Sequence record: NC_048046.1
DNA length: 64,000 nt
Direction: 5' to 3' (one strand)
Within the stretch, counting starts at the first letter, position 1. The number at the start of each line of letters is the position of its first letter. A model generated the notes under the pieces. The model searched no databases, was not told the origin of the DNA, and saw nothing but the letters and a program-made list of their open reading frames with translations. This document shows positions 1,379 through 55,374 of the stretch, piece by piece. Both the position numbers and the translations under genes were made by a program.

Positions 1379-2129
1379 GCACTCGGACACCGAGAACTCG
1401 CTTCCCAATCTGGTGCTGGGCGAGATTGCAGTGAACACCGCCGATGATGTGCTCTGGGTGCGCGCCGGCGGCCGGCGCACGCCTATCCATCTTCCGTCGG
1501 TTCAGCGCGCCATGCCTTATGACGGCCAGTCGGGCGCCCCGCTGGTCTCGACGGGCGGCGCATCCACCTGGGACCCCGGTCTGGCGCCGGTCGCGGTTGT
1601 CGACAACGCGATCAAGGTGGACATTCCGCCTGACGACGGCTTCATGAGCGTGCCGGGCGTGCAGATCATCGGGATCGGGAACGACCGTACGTTGCCGGTG
1701 AACTCGATCCAGATCGAGCACTTTCAGGTGCGCTCCGATCAGATCACCCTGACGTCCCTAGCTTGTGTGATCCGCTCGGCTGGCGCCGGCGCGATCCGCA
1801 TGGGCCTCTTCGACGAAAACGACAACCGTCTGCTGAACCAGCTTTTCAGCACGCCGGCGCAGGGCGTCAATTCGTTCAACTTCAATCTGGTTCTGCCGCG
1901 CGGCCATTATCGCGCGCAGATGTGGAATGCCACCGCCACCGACTTTGGGGTGGCAACCGGTATCCAGACCGATCAGGGGTGGCGCGTGGTTGGCTCGGAT
2001 TTGCAGTTCGTGCGCGGCTACGAAGGCTCGGTCAATCAGAGTAGCGGTCTTGTTCCCATTGCGGGAACGCCGCGACTGTCGCTCACGCCGGGCGTCGACA
2101 AGACGCTCCTGATGCGCTGGCACCTCTAA
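1362..2129 (+). CDS. Putative virion structural protein, paralog 3
   Basis: Motif SLPNLVLGEIAVNTADDVLWV; beta-rich C-terminus similar to the two upstream ORFs; followed by a terminator. Confidence 0.65.
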   Translation: MSIQNKHSDTENSLPNLVLGEIAVNTADDVLWVRAGGRRTPIHLPSVQRAMPYDGQSGAPLVSTGGASTWDPGLAPVAVVDNAIKVDIPPDDGFMSVPGVQIIGIGNDRTLPVNSIQIEHFQVRSDQITLTSLACVIRSAGAGAIRMGLFDENDNRLLNQLFSTPAQGVNSFNFNLVLPRGHYRAQMWNATATDFGVATGIQTDQGWRVVGSDLQFVRGYEGSVNQSSGLVPIAGTPRLSLTPGVDKTLLMRWHL

Positions 2130-2853: not shown

Positions 2854-2939
2854 ACGGGAATTCCAGAGCGGTCAAATGGGCTGGTCTCCAAAACCAGCGG
2901 CGCAAGCCTTCGGGGGTTCGAATCCCTCTTCCCGTGCCA
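2854..2939 (+). tRNA. tRNA-Trp(CCA) with a long variable arm
   Basis: Acceptor acgggaa/ttcccgt, G73-CCA, anticodon arm ctggt-ctCCAaa-accag, T-loop ttcgaat. Confidence 0.85.
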
Positions 2940-2949
2940 CTTCGAATAC

Positions 2950-3026
2950 GCGTCTATAGTATATTGGTCTGATTACCCTTCGTTGCCAACGAAGAGAGGC
3001 GGGTTCGATTCCCGCTAGACGCTCCA
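2950..3026 (+). tRNA. tRNA-Gly(GCC)
   Basis: gcgtcta/tagacgc, cttcg-ttGCCaa-cgaag, U73-CCA. Confidence 0.9.
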
Positions 3027-3030
3027 ATTC

Positions 3031-3104
3031 GCGTCCGTAGCTCAATGGTAGAGCAATGGGCTTCCACCCCGTGGTCGTGGGTTCGATCCCCACCGGACGC
3101 TCCA
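3031..3104 (+). tRNA. tRNA-Gly(TCC)
   Basis: gcgtccg/cggacgc, atggg-ctTCCac-cccgt, U73-CCA. Confidence 0.9.
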
Positions 3105-7552: not shown

Positions 7553-7642
7553 GGGTGAGTTCTCCGAGCGGTCGAAGGGGAGTGACTCTTAATCACTTGG
7601 ACGAAAGTCCCACCGTGGGTTCGAATCCCACCTCACCCTCCA
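7553..7642 (+). tRNA. tRNA-Lys(CTT) with a long variable arm
   Basis: gggtgag/ctcaccc, agtga-ctCTTaa-tcact, variable hairpin ggac-gaaa-gtcc, CCA. Confidence 0.85.
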
Positions 7643-7650
7643 AGTTTTAT

Positions 7651-7738
7651 CCCTGCGTGGCGAAGTATGGTAGACGCGCCAGTTTCAGATACTGGTGTCC
7701 GAAAGGGCGGGTAGGTTCGACTCCTATCGCAGGGACCA
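7651..7738 (+). tRNA. tRNA-Leu(CAG)
   Basis: Class II cloverleaf, ccagt-ttCAGat-actgg, A73-CCA. Confidence 0.92.
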
Positions 7739-14053: not shown

Positions 14054-14128
14054 CCCTACGTAGCTGAGACAGAGTAGCGCCAGAGTGAAATCCTGGAGAC
14101 GGAGGTGCGAGCACTCTCGTGGGGGCCA
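14054..14128 (+). tRNA. tRNA-Phe(GAA), atypical T-loop
   Basis: ccctacg/cgtgggg, loop gtGAAat, T-loop tgcgagc. Confidence 0.7.
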
Positions 14129-14652: not shown

Positions 14653-14741
14653 TCTCATGTGGCGGAACTGGTAAACGCACCGGACTGTTAATCCGGCGTC
14701 TCGCAAGAGACTTGGGGGTTCGAAGCCCTCCGTGAGAGCCA
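14653..14741 (+). tRNA. tRNA-Asn(GTT) with a long variable arm
   Basis: tctcatg/cgtgaga, ccgga-ctGTTaa-tccgg, variable hairpin gtctc-gcaa-gagac, G73. Confidence 0.88.
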
Positions 14742-52589: not shown

Positions 52590-53999
52590 TTAGTCGCGGA
52601 CACCCTCCGGCAGAAGCGCCTCGCCGATGACGCCGGCCGCTTCGGCTTCATGGATGAAGCGCAGGACCGATTCCGAGAAGCCGTCGATGTGCGTCCACTT
52701 GCCGTAGCCCACGCCGTTCTTGTTCGAAGCGACGTTGATCACGTACGAGTGCTTTGCCTTCGGCGCCGGCATGCTGCCGCCGCCCAGCATGTGGTTGACG
52801 CTCGCGCCCGAGGCTTGCTCATCGGTGATGATGATCAGGCGATCGAACTCGAACTTCGCCTGGACAGTGGCGACGGCTTGAACGAGCGCCGTGCCACCGT
52901 AAGGCTGCGAGCGAGCGATCGCTTCGACGCCGGCCATGCCCTTGCGAGCCGGCACTTCCACCACCGAGTTCGAGAAGCTGATCACGCGCAGGTCTTCGGC
53001 CGGGATGACCGAAGCCAGGGCGCAGGCAGCATCACGACGCGTCAGATCGGACTTGGCCGACAGGCGGTCCCGCATCGAACCCGACACGTCCACCATGACC
53101 ACGGTGCGGCCCGGCAGCTTCGGCATGTCGGCGATCGACGCGATCAGCGCTTCATCCAGGGCCGGTTCGAACGACGGTGCCGCACGAGCCGCCGCGATGT
53201 AGCGGAACGGCAGGACGCGGTGCGCGCCGCCCTTGCGGGCCTTAATCGCATCGATCACCAGCTTGCGGTCGACGCCGGCCTGTTCCATGTTGCGCAGGTT
53301 GCGCAGCAGGGCGAGGTAGCCGAGCTTCTTGTCTTCCAGCAGACGGGTGAACTCCGCCTTCTTGTCACCGCCGGCCGACAGCGCGACTTCCCAGGTGTCC
53401 GGCGACTCCAGCGTCTGTTCGACCAGACCCTTGTACAGGGTTTGACGTTCGTCGTTGGCGGCCTTCGGGTGGCTCAGGAACAGCACGTCACGCAGACGCA
53501 CCTCCTTGGCGCGGTCGTACTTGGCGATCTGGTACGCGTCGAACTTCGCGAACGCCTTGGCGAGGCCCAGCTTCATTTGCTTGGACAGCGGAGCCTTGCG
53601 GGCGCCGTCGCGCGGCGGGTTGTACTTCCAGTACAGCGCCACCAGTTCCGACAGTTCGTCGGCGCGCTGGATCACGCGGGCGATCGTCTCGGAGACGAGG
53701 CCGTTGCCCGAGCCGCGCTTGGCCAGGGTGACGAGCAGCAGCAGCGGCACGTGACGCAGGTTGGCGACTTCACGGGCTTCGATGGCGATCTGAGCCAGGG
53801 TGTCGACCGGGACCTGCTCGGCCAGCTTGGCGATGCGGGTGCTGATCTCGACGCCGTCCTCGTAGGCCTCGTTCTCGAACAGGAGGCAGGACATCACCGA
53901 CCGGCGCAGCGCCTGGACGGTCGTCATGCGGGCAGCGGTCGCGCCCTCGTGCGTCTTTTCGGTGAAGGTGTTCTTGGTCGAACGGTTGGTCGATGCCAT
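52590..53999 (-). CDS. rsr: Ro60/TROVE-domain RNA-binding protein with a C-terminal vWA domain
   Basis: THEGA, LRRSVMSCLLFE, DTWEV, LGYLALLRNLRNM, LPFRY, vWA MIDAS DVSGSM and ITDEQ. Confidence 0.92.
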   Translation of the reverse strand: MASTNRSTKNTFTEKTHEGATAARMTTVQALRRSVMSCLLFENEAYEDGVEISTRIAKLAEQVPVDTLAQIAIEAREVANLRHVPLLLLVTLAKRGSGNGLVSETIARVIQRADELSELVALYWKYNPPRDGARKAPLSKQMKLGLAKAFAKFDAYQIAKYDRAKEVRLRDVLFLSHPKAANDERQTLYKGLVEQTLESPDTWEVALSAGGDKKAEFTRLLEDKKLGYLALLRNLRNMEQAGVDRKLVIDAIKARKGGAHRVLPFRYIAAARAAPSFEPALDEALIASIADMPKLPGRTVVMVDVSGSMRDRLSAKSDLTRRDAACALASVIPAEDLRVISFSNSVVEVPARKGMAGVEAIARSQPYGGTALVQAVATVQAKFEFDRLIIITDEQASGASVNHMLGGGSMPAPKAKHSYVINVASNKNGVGYGKWTHIDGFSESVLRFIHEAEAAGVIGEALLPEGVRD

Positions 54000-54038: not shown

Positions 54039-54172
54039 AAGGTTGAGGGGGAACAAGTCGTCCACGGGGTGCGTCTACCAATTCCGCCATCCCTTTCCGA
54101 AGATCGGGAGCAGGGCTCGAACCTGCATTTCGCTTTACCGAAGTATCCGTGTACTACGCCACCCTCAACCTT
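54039..54172 (-). ncRNA. Y-RNA-like unit 1 (permuted tRNA module, T-arm before D-arm)
   Basis: Terminal stem aaggttgaggg/ccctcaacctt; UGGCGUAG core; T-arm gcagg-ttcgagc-cctgc, then D-arm tggcggaattggtagacgc. Confidence 0.85.
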
Positions 54173-54187
54173 ACGGCTGATGACTTG

Positions 54188-54349
54188 GAGAGGTTGAGGG
54201 GGAACTGGCGAGCACGGTTTCTTATTCCGGTGCGTTTGGCCACTCCGCCACATGATCCTGTTGGGGATCAAGGTGGGACTCGAACCCACGTGCCCTTTCG
54301 GACGCCGGTTCCACGAAGTATCCGCACTCTGCGCCACCCTCAACCTCTC
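54188..54349 (-). ncRNA. Y-RNA-like unit 2 (permuted class II tRNA module)
   Basis: 13-bp terminal stem; Leu-type variable arm gtccgaaagggc, T-arm, acceptor closed by ccaaca, D-arm. Confidence 0.88.
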
Positions 54350-54362
54350 GGTCGTTGGTGTC

Positions 54363-54506
54363 GAGGTAGAGGGGGAACAGTCGGCAACGCGTTTTTAGCG
54401 CTCTACCACTGAGCTACCTTGGGCTTTTGGCCCTCGGGTTGGACTCGAACCAACGACCTCTCGATTAACAGTCGAAGAACTCGTCGCCTACGCCACCCTC
54501 TACCTC
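54363..54506 (-). ncRNA. Y-RNA-like unit 3 (permuted tRNA retaining an Asn GTT anticodon hairpin)
   Basis: gaggtagaggg/ccctctacctc stem; tcga-ctGTTaa-tcga, T-arm, acceptor, D-arm tagctcagtggtagagc. Confidence 0.88.
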
Positions 54507-54508
54507 AA

Positions 54509-54648
54509 TCGGCGTGTAGGTTGACACATGGGGAACTGGCGCCGTCGGTTTAGGGGGATCGAACCCCGTGGCGCGGATTTGCGGCCGCACCATTTCAACC
54601 AGCGAAGTAGCCGAAAGCTACGCCACCATGTGTCAGCCTACACGCCGA
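54509..54648 (-). ncRNA. Y-RNA-like unit 4 (non-permuted, D-armless, Cys-like module)
   Basis: About 22-bp terminal stem; gcgg-ccGCAaat-ccgc, then T-arm gggg-ttcgatc-cccc. Confidence 0.8.
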
Positions 54649-54661
54649 CACCCCGATCATT

Positions 54662-54832
54662 AGGCGGTGGGGGAACAAGCGATCCCACAACCTTAGGCGC
54701 TCTAACCGCTGAGCTACACGCCCATCATCAATTCAGGCCGGAGCCTGGACTGGTGGTGGACGCGGCTGGATTCGAACCAGCGACCTCCCGCTCCTAATGC
54801 GAAGTAAGTGACATCTACGCCACCCACCGCCT
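54662..54832 (-). ncRNA. Y-RNA-like unit 5 (permuted tRNA with an internal ACCA)
   Basis: aggcggtggg/cccaccgcct stem; T-arm gctgg-ttcgaat-ccagc, cgcgtcc-ACCA, linker hairpin, gggcgtg plus D-arm. Confidence 0.88.
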
Positions 54833-54842
54833 CGTGATCGGT

Positions 54843-55018
54843 GTCGAGTGCGTTTTGGAGGGCTCAGGGGAATGAACGAGAAGGCACTTTGGATGCCGGT
54901 TGTTCTACCGCTGAACTACACCCGAGTTGCCCCGGATGGTGGGATTCGAACCCACGACCCACTGGTTGGAGAAGAAATCCTCCTCTACGCCACCTGAGCC
55001 TTCCAAAACGCACTCGAC
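54843..55018 (-). ncRNA. Y-RNA-like unit 6 (permuted tRNA module)
   Basis: 26-bp terminal stem; T-arm gtggg-ttcgaat-cccac, acceptor catccgg/tcgggtg, D-arm tagttcagcggtagaac. Confidence 0.88.
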
Positions 55019-55047
55019 CTGCCTTTGACGACAGACCAACCCGATCA

Positions 55048-55144
55048 GCGGTGGGGGAACGAGCGCCCCCAGGGAGACTAGACCTTTCAGTCCGGTCGCT
55101 TGGTTATGGTAAGCGAAGTACCCGAGGACTACGCCACCCACCGC
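55048..55144 (-). ncRNA. Y-RNA-like unit 7 (no tRNA module)
   Basis: gcggtggg/cccaccgc stem; same UGGCGUAG-N8-UACUUCG and GUUCC core; two small apical hairpins. Confidence 0.8.
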
Positions 55145-55154
55145 AAATCTGGTC

Positions 55155-55233
55155 GTCCGGGAATTGTCGAGGTCGGAAATGGGCCGAAGCCCGCTCTATG
55201 CAAAAGAAGTAACCGATCTCTGTCGCCACGGAC
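55155..55233 (-). ncRNA. Y-RNA-like unit 8 (short, divergent)
   Basis: gtccg/cggac stem; UGGCGACAG-N8-UACUUC; AUUCC 3' strand; inner helix still pairs. Confidence 0.6.
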
Positions 55234-55239
55234 AGTGAC

Positions 55240-55278
55240 CTTGTCACATAGGGCGATTCCGATGTCAACAATGCTGGC
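55240..55278 (-). promoter_or_regulatory. Promoter of the Y-array/rsr unit
   Basis: Minus strand GCCAGcattgTTGACA...ctatgt directly upstream of unit 8. Confidence 0.6.
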
Positions 55279-55374
55279 AAACTTTTTTCGAGAAATGTGT
55301 GCCTGACTGTCAGACATGAAAAAGCCCCGCAACGTCCGGACGTCACGGGGCTTCCCCAGGTAGGTGATGGCGAC

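What the first reader, a model, noticed from the sequence alone, without database searches (positions are those of the whole stretch)
54039..55018. Array units carry different circularly permuted tRNA bodies
Seen: in units 1, 2, 5 and 6 the order is T-arm, acceptor 3' strand, short linker, acceptor 5' strand, D-arm. That is a tRNA opened at the anticodon region and joined to the shared core. The bodies differ: unit 2 has the Leu-type variable arm gtccgaaagggc, also present in this phage's Leu tRNAs at 7651 and 7844, while units 5 and 6 are class I types. Established: this T-before-D permutation is the YrlA architecture. Inference: several different tRNAs were captured independently, giving a panel of mimics rather than copies of one.
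Basis: partly seen in the sequence, partly recalled or inferred. Interest (0 to 1): 0.85.

Follow-up and report, generated by a model that had tools for sequence, protein, structure and literature searches.

The report
Phage Ro60 Y-RNA array, mixed tRNA mimics
Upstream of its Ro60 gene, Caulobacter phage CcrPW carries eight tandem Y-RNA-like genes, five holding a circularly permuted tRNA-like domain of at least two tRNA classes; this is a known RNA kind (YrlA) in an unusually large and varied form.

Summary
On the minus strand, 54039-55237 holds eight tandem units directly upstream of a TROVE+vWA (Ro60/Rsr) gene. Each unit has its own outer stem around a shared core: GG-U-GG-CGUAG, then (Y)UACUUCG, then GUU-CC-CC. 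Units 1, 2, 3, 5 and 6 carry T arm, closed acceptor stem, then D arm. All five become ARAGORN-valid tRNAs once re-permuted; none does in native order, and none of 1000 shuffles does.

This is the YrlA architecture. YrlA-type RNAs were already reported for phages, including the 96%-identical CcrColossus.

The bodies do differ. Units 1 and 2 are class II and Leu-like. Units 3, 5 and 6 are generic class I. Unit 5 adds alanine-type acceptor features and an encoded ACCA. A tree test rejects one origin for the bodies (p-AU 0.0009).

"Independent capture" holds only in part. The same unit types recur in Brevundimonas, Xanthomonas/Xylella and Rhizobium phages and in viral metagenome contigs, so they are old. 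No specific donor tRNA is identifiable for units 5 and 6. Class II units fit a single origin.

Verdict: a new variant of a known kind, with a conserved panel of tRNA mimics on Ro60-binding scaffolds. Function is untested.

The parts
55318..55357 (-). Terminator-like hairpin ending the upstream HTH gene; marks the start of the array transcription unit
   Evidence: GC-rich hairpin followed by a T run in the sequence. Weak Rfam F6 hit.
55263..55268 (-). TTGACA box about 30 nt upstream of the first unit; candidate -35 element of a single promoter for the array plus rsr
   Evidence: Located. A TTGACA box sits at the same place ahead of the arrays of Kabachok, Kikimora and Usme. The E. coli-type promoter scan found nothing, so this is an inference.
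55151..55237 (-). Unit R8: degenerate Y-like unit (GUGGCGACAG ... UUACUUCU ... AUUCCC) with no tRNA body
   Evidence: Orthologs occupy the first position in the Kabachok and Kikimora arrays.
55048..55144 (-). Unit R7: full Y core with two small hairpins and no tRNA body (comparable to YrlB-type Y RNAs)
   Evidence: The hairpin CGCUUACCAUAACCAAGCG recurs in Rhizobium phage unit T6.
54843..55018 (-). Unit R6: 26-bp outer stem, Y core, and a class I permuted tRNA body at 54896-54965 (T arm GUGGG/CCCAC, GCAA-capped acceptor stem, D arm GUUC/GAAC)
   Evidence: Rfam YrlA 33.4 bits. ARAGORN accepts it after re-permutation. Compensatory changes against CcrColossus in the T stem, stem 2 and outer stem. 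Folding z-score -7.9.
54653..54841 (-). Unit R5: Y core, anticodon-like hairpin UUCGC-AUUAGGA-GCGGG, and a class I body at 54698-54786. The acceptor has G1-C72, G2-C71, G3oU70 and A73, with an encoded CCA (ACCA = 54754-54757) followed by a 30-nt linker with a hairpin (54734-54747)
   Evidence: ACCA and both stems are unchanged in CcrColossus; the substitutions fall in loops. Orthologous units in Brevundimonas phages have 77-86% (Kabachok) and 70-77% (Kikimora) identical scaffolds, but a different, Gln-like D arm and a closed acceptor.
54511..54646 (-). Unit R4: 21-bp outer stem, Y core, one hairpin and a T-arm-like hairpin (54553-54568); no acceptor stem or D arm
   Evidence: Orthologs in Kabachok, Kikimora and Usme.
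54361..54508 (-). Unit R3: Y core, then a complete anticodon-like arm UUCGA-CUGUUAA-UCGAG, AGGUC, T arm, closed acceptor stem and D arm (54399-54476)
   Evidence: Rfam YrlA 29.9 bits and tRNA 25 bits over model positions 7-64. The same unit type lies next to Ro60 in Usme, Kikimora and 13 viral metagenome contigs (15 such units in all).
54188..54349 (-). Unit R2: Y core, a residual 4-bp anticodon stem (CCGG/CCGG), and a class II body at 54227-54308 with variable arm GUCCGAAAGGGC (54292-54303), a 3-bp D stem and loop GAGUGGCCAAA
   Evidence: In an alignment with R1, Kabachok K6 and Rhizobium T8, 17 of 37 pairs show changes on both sides.
54039..54172 (-). Unit R1: Y core and a class II-type body at 54070-54131. 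The D arm UGGCGGAAUUGGUAGACGC is identical (19/19) to that of a Rhizobium-phage tRNA-Leu. The UUCG-capped acceptor stem has two mismatches. The variable hairpin is built from the CUUCG motif
   Evidence: An ortholog with the same D arm lies in viral contig L016. It falls in the starred tRNA-Leu clade.
52590..53999 (-). rsr: phage Ro60 ortholog of 469 aa (TROVE + Ro60 vWA domains); its start codon is 40 nt downstream of R1
   Evidence: Pfam TROVE 1.3e-18 and vWA_Ro60 2.7e-06. 503 viral contigs encode relatives.

Best explanation
This is an array of eight Y-RNA paralogs. It most likely forms one transcription unit with the phage Ro60 (rsr) gene immediately downstream.

Shown:
- Every unit closes its ends in a unit-specific outer stem. 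That stem runs into a conserved bulged helix and loop: 5' GG-U-GG-CGUAG paired to GUU-CC-CC 3'.
- The 5' half of this core is one base away from the GNCGAA(N)G motif that earlier work assigns to Ro60 binding.
- Five units carry a tRNA-like domain in the YrlA order: T arm, closed acceptor stem, D arm. The tRNA tertiary-contact nucleotides are intact.
- The domains are not copies of one body. R1 and R2 are class II and Leu-like. R3, R5 and R6 are the common GCUC/GUUC class I type. Homologous arrays in other phages add Gln/Glu-like, Pro-like and other D arms.
- Scaffold and body histories disagree. R1, R2 and R3 share scaffolds but not body class. R5 shares its scaffold with Brevundimonas-phage units that carry a different D arm.

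Inferred:
- The core binds phage Ro60.
- Bodies have been exchanged on conserved scaffolds. The likely route is recombination with junctions of tandem tRNA genes. R5 still carries ACCA plus a spacer, as such a junction would.
- The unit types are old and maintained, so the array works as a panel. Each Ro60-Y RNP would present a different tRNA-shaped handle to tRNA-binding proteins, such as modification and processing enzymes or exoribonuclease partners like PNPase. This would diversify what phage Ro60 is tethered to or shielded from during infection.
For: - Location and strand next to a TROVE+vWA gene.
- Sub-threshold Rfam YrlA hits on R6, R5 and R3.
- The core is invariant in R1-R7.
- ARAGORN accepts 5 of 5 re-permuted modules, 0 of 5 in native order and 0 of 1000 shuffles.
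- Covariation of the T, acceptor and D stems across 18 modules and within the class II units.
- Compensatory substitutions between CcrPW and CcrColossus in the R6 stems.
- Homologous arrays in the same genomic neighbourhood or upstream of Ro60 in Brevundimonas, Xylella/Xanthomonas and Rhizobium phages.
- In the loci examined, 67 have at least one module upstream of Ro60, 26 have two or more, and 20 have two or more different D stems. CcrPW has the most, with five.
- The tree places R1, K6 and T8 with tRNA-Leu (98/96) and K4 and Kik4 with tRNA-Gln (97/86). One clade for all modules is rejected, p-AU 0.0009.
- Scaffold-body discordance.
[quoted passage not shown] A phage Ro60-Yrl-PNPase complex has been described (PMC12135203).
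Against: - No expression, processing or Ro60-binding data exist for any unit.
- No unit reaches Rfam's YrlA gathering score (best 33.4 against 69), and R1 and R2 give no YrlA hit.
- The core reads GGCGUAG, not GNCGAA.
- No E. coli-type promoter was found.
- The tree rests on 43 columns of constrained sequence. Selection for tRNA-like shape, or gene conversion, could mimic separate origins.
- The body replacement in R5 is not significant in the clade test (p 0.138).
- BLAST gives no isotype-specific donor for R5 or R6.
- The proposed panel-of-handles function is inference only.
Confidence: 0.75

Rival explanations
1. There was a single origin. All bodies descend from one ancestral YrlA body by tandem duplication and divergence, and the class II look of R1 and R2 (long variable arm, 3-bp D stem) evolved secondarily.
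For: - YrlAs with long variable loops are known (bioRxiv 10.1101/312249).
- R1, R2 and R3 scaffolds are 78-81% identical.
- The GCUC-type modules are only marginally rejected as one clade (p 0.042), and class II modules are not rejected (p 0.15).
- The sequences are short and heavily constrained.
Against: - One clade for all modules is rejected (p-AU 0.0009).
- The R1 D arm is identical (19/19) to a tRNA-Leu D arm.
- The R2 variable arm matches the phage's tRNA-Leu 12 of 12.
- Starred branches force at least three changes of the module label on the tree.
- D arms of Gln/Glu, Pro and other types occur in homologous arrays.
Confidence: 0.12
2. One reading: each unit was captured recently and separately from this phage's own or its host's tRNA genes.
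For: - The variable arm of R2 is identical to that of the phage's tRNA-Leu-CAG and -GAG.
- R5 retains ACCA plus a spacer, as a fresh tandem-tRNA junction would.
- The phage's tandem tRNA-Gly junction already scores 56.5 bits with the permuted-module model.
Against: - Unit types R1, R2, R3, R4, R5, R6 and R8 have orthologs in phages whose Ro60 is only 37-70% identical.
- Outside the variable arm, R2 is no closer to the phage's tRNA-Leu than to other class II tRNAs.
- R5 and R6 have no close donor among 50,697 phage genomes.
Confidence: 0.08
3. The units are permuted pre-tRNAs, or tmRNA-like genes, that are processed into working decoders or ribosome rescuers.
For: - R5 has an alanine-type acceptor stem, A73 and an encoded CCA, and gives weak hits to permuted tmRNA models.
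- R3 has an intact anticodon-like arm.
Against: - R1, R2 and R6 have no anticodon loop.
- The tmRNA hits cover only the T arm and acceptor region and are far below threshold (24.2 against 47).
- No tag reading frame or pseudoknots were seen.
- Bacteria lack the splicing endonuclease pathway that matures permuted tRNAs (bioRxiv 10.1101/312249).
Confidence: 0.03
4. The array is decayed debris of a tRNA gene cluster with no function of its own.
For: Tandem tRNA junctions can score well with the permuted-module model. Annotators called parts of such units tRNA-Gln or tRNA-Ser.
Against: - The non-tRNA core is invariant in seven units.
- Each unit has its own fully paired outer stem.
- Compensatory changes occur between close and distant relatives.
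- Position next to Ro60 is conserved across many phage lineages.
Confidence: 0.02

Closest known systems
YrlA Y RNAs (Rfam RF02553; Salmonella Typhimurium, Mycobacterium smegmatis, mycobacteriophages; Chen et al. 2014, PMC4201824)
   Same: They are encoded beside rsr on the same strand, and the terminal stem carries a Ro60-type motif. The effector domain runs T arm, closed acceptor-like stem, D arm, with tRNA tertiary nucleotides. A YUAY motif precedes the variable region. Phage examples, including CcrColossus, were already listed (PMC12135203, citing Chen et al.).
   Different: - There are eight units in tandem, not one or two.
- The motif is GGCGUAG, not GNCGAA.
- T and D stem sequences are not the near-invariant YrlA ones.
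- Two units have class II Leu-like D arms and are invisible to the Rfam model.
- One unit encodes ACCA with alanine identity pairs.
- All units score below half of the family's gathering score.
Thermus phage phiLo Ro60 with Yrl1 and Yrl2 (PMC12135203)
   Same: A phage Ro60 has several Y-like RNA genes directly upstream. These were shown to bind the phage Ro60 and to form a complex with host PNPase.
   Different: The phiLo Yrls were described as stem-bulge-stem RNAs with a CGAA motif and no tRNA-like domain. There are two units, not eight. The proteins share only about 28% identity.
Deinococcus radiodurans Yrn1
   Same: It is a Ro60-bound Y RNA that carries tRNA-like elements (a T arm) and tethers Ro60 to PNPase.
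   Different: The order of its arms relative to the ends is the opposite, and it has no full D arm. The nearest analogues found here are Rhizobium-phage unit T6 and the crAss001 element, not the CcrPW units.
Two-piece (circularly permuted) tmRNA of alpha-proteobacteria
   Same: R5 has T arm, acceptor 3' strand, ACCA, an intervening segment, then acceptor 5' strand, with G3oU70. This is the gene order of permuted tmRNA. A Brevundimonas relative encodes a true permuted tmRNA near rsr.
   Different: R5 has a full D arm and sits inside a Y scaffold. It has no tag reading frame or pseudoknots, and its model scores are far below threshold.
Circularly permuted tRNA genes of red algae and some archaea
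   Same: The 3' half precedes the 5' half, the acceptor stem is closed by a loop, and the ends pair in place of the anticodon stem.
   Different: Those genes are matured into complete decoders with an anticodon loop. Here the anticodon loop is replaced by a Ro60-binding scaffold.

Membership tests
YrlA (Y RNA-like A, RF02553) | Encoded within about 4 kb of the Ro60/rsr gene, on the same strand | tested here: met
   The array spans 54039-55237(-). The rsr gene at 52590-53999(-) has TROVE and Ro60-vWA domains.
YrlA (Y RNA-like A, RF02553) | Effector domain in the order (V), T arm, closed acceptor-like stem-loop, D arm, with the RNA's 5' and 3' ends pairing in place of the anticodon stem | tested here: met
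   Met for R1, R2, R3, R5 and R6, with covariation support. Not met for R4, R7 and R8, which resemble non-tRNA Y RNAs.
YrlA (Y RNA-like A, RF02553) | tRNA tertiary-contact nucleotides conserved (U8, G18-G19, T54-Psi55-C56, A58, last base of the variable loop a pyrimidine) | tested here: met
   All five modules have U8, a GG in the D loop, a UUCGA/UUCAA T loop, and a C or U before the T stem.
YrlA (Y RNA-like A, RF02553) | GNCGAAN0-1G motif near the 5' end (proposed Ro60 contact) | tested here: inconclusive
   The CcrPW units have GGCGUAG, or GGCGCAG in R2, which is one or two bases off. Rhizobium-phage homologs have GUUGCGAA/GUUGCGAC.
YrlA (Y RNA-like A, RF02553) | Near-invariant T-stem and D-stem sequences (GCGGG/CCCGC and GCUC/GAGC) | tested here: not met
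   T stems are GCAGG, GUGGG, GUUGG and GCUGG. D stems are GCG/CGC in R1 and R2, and GUUC/GAAC in R6. Fourteen D-stem types occur across related loci.
YrlA (Y RNA-like A, RF02553) | Score at or above the Rfam gathering threshold (69 bits) | tested here: not met
   R6 scores 33.4, R5 30.5 and R3 29.9 bits. R1 and R2 give no hit even at E<=1, and nothing reaches the gathering threshold.
YrlA (Y RNA-like A, RF02553) | Bound by Rsr in vivo and modified by TruB and DusA | not testable with these tools
   Needs immunoprecipitation and modification mapping.
Functional tRNA gene (RF00005) | Colinear cloverleaf with an anticodon loop and free acceptor ends | tested here: not met
   ARAGORN finds no tRNA in 54039-55237, nor in the native modules. 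The only Rfam tRNA hit is partial: 25 bits in R3, over model positions 7-64.
Permuted tmRNA (RF04321 / RF01849) | Acceptor 3' piece with CCA placed ahead of the 5' piece, plus a tag reading frame and pseudoknots, scoring above threshold | tested here: not met
   Only the R5 T arm and acceptor region aligns (24.2 bits against 47; beta_tmRNA 26.5 against 84). ARAGORN calls no tmRNA.

The most novel reading that the evidence does not exclude
Y-RNA scaffolds of this phage Ro60 clade act as cassette holders that repeatedly take up bodies from different tRNA genes through tandem-tRNA junctions. The maintained panel lets the phage present mimics of several tRNA classes.

A recurrent subtype is CcrPW R5 and the viral contigs L032 and L035. 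All three have G1-C72, G2-C71, G3oU70, A73 and an encoded CCA. This subtype would be opened by RNase P to give a two-piece Y RNA with a free CCA end that alanyl-tRNA synthetase can charge. The result would be an aminoacylated Ro60 RNP. More generally, the modules could act as decoys or adaptors for host enzymes that act on tRNA, including tRNA-targeting defences.
Probability: 0.25. Interest if true: 0.8.

Novelty: new variant of a known kind. Interest (0 to 1): 0.6.

Why it matters
YrlA RNAs are described as having nearly invariant T and D stems. That has led to the idea of one sequence-specific, still unknown partner at the tRNA elbow. This phage clade breaks the rule. One Ro60 gene is served by up to eight Y RNAs whose tRNA-like domains fall into different tRNA classes, and the set is conserved across phages of alpha- and gamma-proteobacteria.

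This gives natural variants for asking what the tRNA-like domain binds. It also gives sequence-level support to the dimeric-tRNA model of Y RNA origin: R5 retains ACCA plus a spacer, and R3-type units retain a whole first tRNA. Finally, it makes a specific testable prediction, namely RNase P opening and alanylation of R5-type units. Caulobacter CB15 with CcrPW or CcrColossus is a tractable laboratory system for these tests.

Tried and rejected
- Tandem Repeats Finder sees no array. The units share only short core motifs, so the array had to be defined from the core and the stems.
- Rfam at gathering threshold finds nothing in the array.
- The E. coli-type promoter scan found nothing.
- BLAST of re-permuted R1, R2, R5 and R6 against 50,697 phage genomes was meant to name donor isotypes. 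It gave colinear matches but mixed isotypes: R2 to Tyr/Ser/Lys/Leu, R5 to Met/Val/Ala/Thr/Pro/Asn/Arg, R6 to Thr/Gly/Asn/Ala/His/Lys. R1 gave only partial hits. Isotype assignment beyond "class II, Leu-like" and "generic class I" was dropped.
- Concerted evolution of the class II variable arm with each phage's own tRNA-Leu was tested. It holds in CcrPW, nearly holds in the Rhizobium phage, and fails in Kabachok. It is left as an open observation.
- The body swap in R5 was tested by a clade test and was not significant (p 0.138). It is kept only as suggestive, based on the D-arm type and the contrast between scaffold and body identity.
- A TTAGG/CCTAA residual anticodon stem in R5 was considered and dropped, because CcrColossus breaks it while the alternative hairpin is kept.
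- The supplementary tables of Chen et al. 2014, which list how many CcrColossus YrlAs were reported, are not held. The Annual Review article (PMC10870794) is not held either.
Full report
**Source and setting.** The window is Caulobacter phage CcrPW: 100% identity to NC_048046 115990-117320, and 96% to CcrColossus. The 469-aa gene has TROVE (1.3e-18) and Ro60-type vWA domains, so it is a Ro60/Rsr ortholog. GenBank annotates nothing sensible over the span. CcrPW has a small plus-strand "hypothetical protein". CcrColossus has a "tRNA-Gln" and two "terminators".

**Checking the observation.** Read on the minus strand, the region holds eight tandem units. Their limits are R1 54039-54172, R2 54188-54349, R3 54361-54508, R4 54511-54646, R5 54653-54841, R6 54843-55018, R7 55048-55144 and R8 55151-55237.

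- Tandem Repeats Finder sees nothing, because the units share only a short core.
- R1 to R7 all contain GG-U-GG-CG(U/C)AG near the 5' end and UU-CC-CC near the 3' end. Between these and the variable middle lies a second stem followed by (A/U/C/G)UACUUCG.
- Around the core, each unit has its own perfectly or nearly perfectly paired outer stem of 9 to 26 bp.
- Six of the eight units fold far better than shuffled copies, with z from -3.3 to -7.9.

R1, R2, R3, R5 and R6 contain, in order, a T arm, an acceptor 3' strand, a linker, an acceptor 5' strand, U8-N9 and a D arm.

- After in-silico re-permutation with an artificial anticodon loop, ARAGORN calls all five as tRNAs at default settings. It draws R1 and R2 with a variable-arm stem-loop and a 3-bp D stem.
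- It calls none in native order, and none of 1000 shuffles.
- The 12-nt variable arm of R2 is identical to that of tRNA-Leu-CAG and tRNA-Leu-GAG, and occurs nowhere else in the window.

The array is on the minus strand. R3 also has the permuted order. The R5 linker is ACCA plus 30 nt, not short. R3 keeps a full anticodon-like arm (UUCGA-CUGUUAA-UCGAG), so it is opened between the D and anticodon arms.

**What it is.** The architecture is that of YrlA Y RNAs. These are encoded next to rsr on the same strand. A terminal stem carries a Ro60-type motif, and a tRNA-like domain has T before D with a closed acceptor stem (PMC4201824; bioRxiv 10.1101/312249). Rfam's YrlA model hits R6, R5 and R3, but only at 30-33 bits against a threshold of 69. 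It misses R1 and R2. Phage YrlAs were reported in 2014, and a 2025 paper names CcrColossus among them. The supplementary table that would say how many is not held.

The structure is supported by evolution.

- Between CcrPW and CcrColossus, R6 shows compensatory changes in its T stem (U-A to C-G), in stem 2, and at several places in the outer stem, including a paired deletion. Changes in R5 and R7 fall in loops.
- Across 18 modules from five phage lineages, 92.4% of cells in the T, acceptor and D stems pair. Shuffles give 62.8%, and slid partners give 32-44%. There are 82 doubly changed cells against 27.5 in shuffles.
- The four class II units alone show changes on both sides at 17 of 37 pairs.

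**Relatives.** The same arrangement exists in several other phage groups.

- Brevundimonas phages have two array types, Kabachok and Kikimora, in the same HTH-dUTPase-RNR neighbourhood.
- The 43-kb Xylella/Xanthomonas phages (Usme) have an array.
- Rhizobium phage RHph_TM39 has about eight to nine units, with core GUUGCGA ... AUCUC.

Unit types are recognisably orthologous and largely keep their order:

| CcrPW unit | Relatives | Shared feature |
|---|---|---|
| R8 | K1, Kik1 | degenerate first unit |
| R6 | K3, Kik3, Usm1 | class I body |
| R5 | K4, Kik4, Rhizobium T4 | scaffold |
| R4 | K5, Kik5, Usm4 | T arm only |
| R3 | Kik6, Usm5 | anticodon-like arm |
| R2 | K6, T8 | class II body |
| R1 | unit in viral contig L016 | identical D arm |

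A covariance model of the permuted module was searched over 79 Ro60-encoding viral contigs plus six reference phage loci. 67 loci have at least one module within 1.6 kb upstream on the Ro60 strand. 26 have two or more, and 20 have two or more different D stems. CcrPW has the most, with five. GCUC/GAGC dominates (71 of 102). Types GUCU/GGAC, GUGU/GCAC, GCGC/GCGC, GCCC/GGGC and the class II GCG(G)/(A)CGC recur.

**One body or several.** A maximum-likelihood tree was built on the elbow core (positions 8-26, the last five variable-loop bases, and the T arm). It used 18 modules and 45 tRNAs from CcrPW and Kabachok.

- R1, K6 and T8 fall in a starred clade (98/96) with all six tRNA-Leu and the two odd class-II-shaped Asn tRNAs.
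- K4 and Kik4 fall with tRNA-Gln (97/86).
- R3, R5 and R6 sit in the unresolved Ile/Ala/Arg/Gly group.
- Holding all modules as one clade costs 65 log-likelihood units and is rejected (p-AU 0.0009). Holding the five CcrPW modules together is rejected at 0.0048.
- Within classes, a single origin is not rejected for class II (0.15) or Gln-like modules (0.20). It is marginal for GCUC-type modules (0.042; this group was named after seeing the tree).

Scaffolds tell a different story from bodies.

- R1, R2 and R3 scaffolds are 78-81% identical although R3 is class I.
- R5 shares 86% and 77% of its flanks with Kabachok K4 but only 51% of its body, and the D-arm type differs. That swap is suggestive only, since the clade test gives p 0.138.

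BLAST of re-permuted modules against all phage genomes gives end-to-end colinear matches to ordinary tRNAs at 70-75%, but with mixed isotypes. R1 gives only partial matches. No donor can be named beyond "Leu-like class II" and "generic class I".

The bodies are not copies of one. But the diversity is old and shared with distant phages, part of it arose by duplication, and recent capture from this phage's own tRNAs is not shown.

**Unit 5.** Its acceptor stem is G1-C72, G2-C71, G3oU70, C4-G69, G5-C68, U6oG67, G7-C66. It is followed by A73 and CCA, then a 30-nt linker with a hairpin. All of this is kept in CcrColossus, where changes occur only in loops.

- Among 84 non-junction modules, eight have a 7-nt acceptor strand followed by N-CCA (binomial P 5e-5).
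- Three of them (R5, L032 2732-2799, L035 2600-2665) have the full alanine set.
- These counts are not independent events, because some units are orthologs.

The layout is what a junction of two tandem copies of a CCA-encoding tRNA gene would give. The phage's own tandem tRNA-Gly junction at 2994-3055 scores 56.5 bits with the module model. M. smegmatis YrlA is cut by RNase P in the acceptor loop and receives CCA (PMC4201824). R5 is thus a good candidate for the same processing, with the CCA already encoded.

**Mechanism.**

Shown:
- The array lies next to Ro60, with no terminator-like element between the units and rsr.
- A TTGACA box sits about 30 nt upstream of R8, and also ahead of the Kabachok, Kikimora and Usme arrays.
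- The core is invariant, and the tRNA-like domains are covariation-supported.

Inferred:
- The units are cut from one transcript that also carries rsr.
- The bulged helix GG-U-GG/CC-CC with the CGUAG and GUU loops is the Ro60 site. It is one base off the GNCGAA(N)G motif.
- The tRNA-like domains are effector handles. In Deinococcus, Salmonella and Thermus phage phiLo, Y RNAs tether Ro60 to PNPase (PMC4201824, PMC12135203). For YrlA the partner of the tRNA-like domain is unknown.
- A conserved panel of different bodies suggests several partners, or decoy roles towards enzymes that recognise tRNA shape. This step is speculative.

**Novelty.** The kind is known: YrlA, phage Ro60, and the permuted-tRNA description. 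Not found in the papers searched:
- the eight-unit array;
- its conservation as a set;
- bodies of different tRNA classes, contradicting the near-invariant D and T stems;
- scaffold-body mosaicism;
- the recurrent alanine-type ACCA units.

I file it as a new variant of a known kind.

Noticed in passing
window 7553-7642, 14653-14741, 2854-2939 (+): The phage tRNA cluster contains long-variable-arm (class-II-shaped) tRNAs with Lys-CTT, Asn-GTT and Trp-CCA anticodons. These amino acids normally use class I tRNAs. Brevundimonas phage Kabachok has the same odd Asn (84 nt) and Trp (82 nt) genes. The D arm and anticodon-stem strand of R2 closely resemble this odd Asn tRNA.
   Followed up: partly
L008 (Bacteroides phage crAss001) 4124-4267 (+): Downstream of the crAss001 TROVE gene lies a colinear tRNA (Rfam tRNA 46.6 bits, model positions 1-71). 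Its anticodon arm is replaced by about 70 nt resembling a closed Y core (UGUUCC ... GUUGGUGUAG ... UUACUUCAA). It looks like the un-permuted counterpart of YrlA, with free acceptor ends.
   Followed up: partly
L007 (Rhizobium phage RHph_TM39) about 1915-2060 (+): One unit of the Rhizobium-phage array carries a tRNA body in normal order (D arm, anticodon arm, T arm; Rfam tRNA positions 6-65, 33.9 bits), with the Y stem in place of the acceptor stem. Both orientations therefore coexist in one array. Its first hairpin matches the CcrPW R7 hairpin CGCUUACCAUAACCAAGCG.
   Followed up: partly
window 54399-54476 (-); L004, L005 and 13 IMG/VR loci: R3-type units are the commonest unit next to Ro60. 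Their anticodon-like hairpin keeps a Y-U-N-N-N-A-A loop, while the "anticodon" varies: GUU, UGU, CUU, GCU, GAU, GCG and others. Most have U36-A37-A38. ARAGORN and genome annotators call them tRNAs (Asn, Ser, Thr, Lys, Ile, Arg).
   Followed up: partly
window 54754-54764 (-); L032 2732-2799; L035 2600-2665; also L007 1677-1741 and 2264-2331, L062 2142-2204, window 54231-54294: An encoded N73-CCA directly after the 7-nt acceptor 3' strand is enriched in Y-RNA modules: 8 of 84, binomial P 5e-5. Three have the alanine identity set G1-C72, G2-C71, G3oU70, A73. Several share a CCA-UCUAU-type linker.
   Followed up: partly
window 2994-3055 (+): The junction of the tandem tRNA-Gly-GCC and tRNA-Gly-TCC genes scores 56.5 bits with the permuted-module model. 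Their acceptor strands are nearly complementary. It is a present-day example of the raw material assumed by the dimeric-tRNA origin model.
   Followed up: no
L004 (Brevundimonas phage Kikimora) 220-565 (-): A permuted (two-piece) tmRNA gene (Rfam tmRNA_permuted 57.7 bits, above threshold) and a tRNA-Cys lie downstream of that phage's Ro60 gene. No tmRNA was found in the CcrPW window.
   Followed up: no
window 54069-54197 (+); L002 4771-4838 and 4896-4911: Database annotations over the array look spurious. CcrPW gp439 "hypothetical protein" lies antisense across R1 and R2. The CcrColossus "tRNA-Gln" covers the 5' scaffold, hairpin and T arm of R5. A CcrColossus "terminator" lies inside R6.
   Followed up: partly
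window 14054-14125 (+): An Rfam tRNA hit just above threshold (30.2 bits) lies upstream of tRNA-Val. It is not called by ARAGORN or annotated. It may be a degenerate extra tRNA.
   Followed up: no
L006 (Microcystis phage Mvi-JY20) 2391-2472 (+): In this phage (Ro60 46% identical) a normal, full-length tRNA-Leu (48.5 bits) sits directly upstream of the Ro60 start, where other phages have a class II or R3-type Y unit. No permuted module was found upstream there.
   Followed up: no
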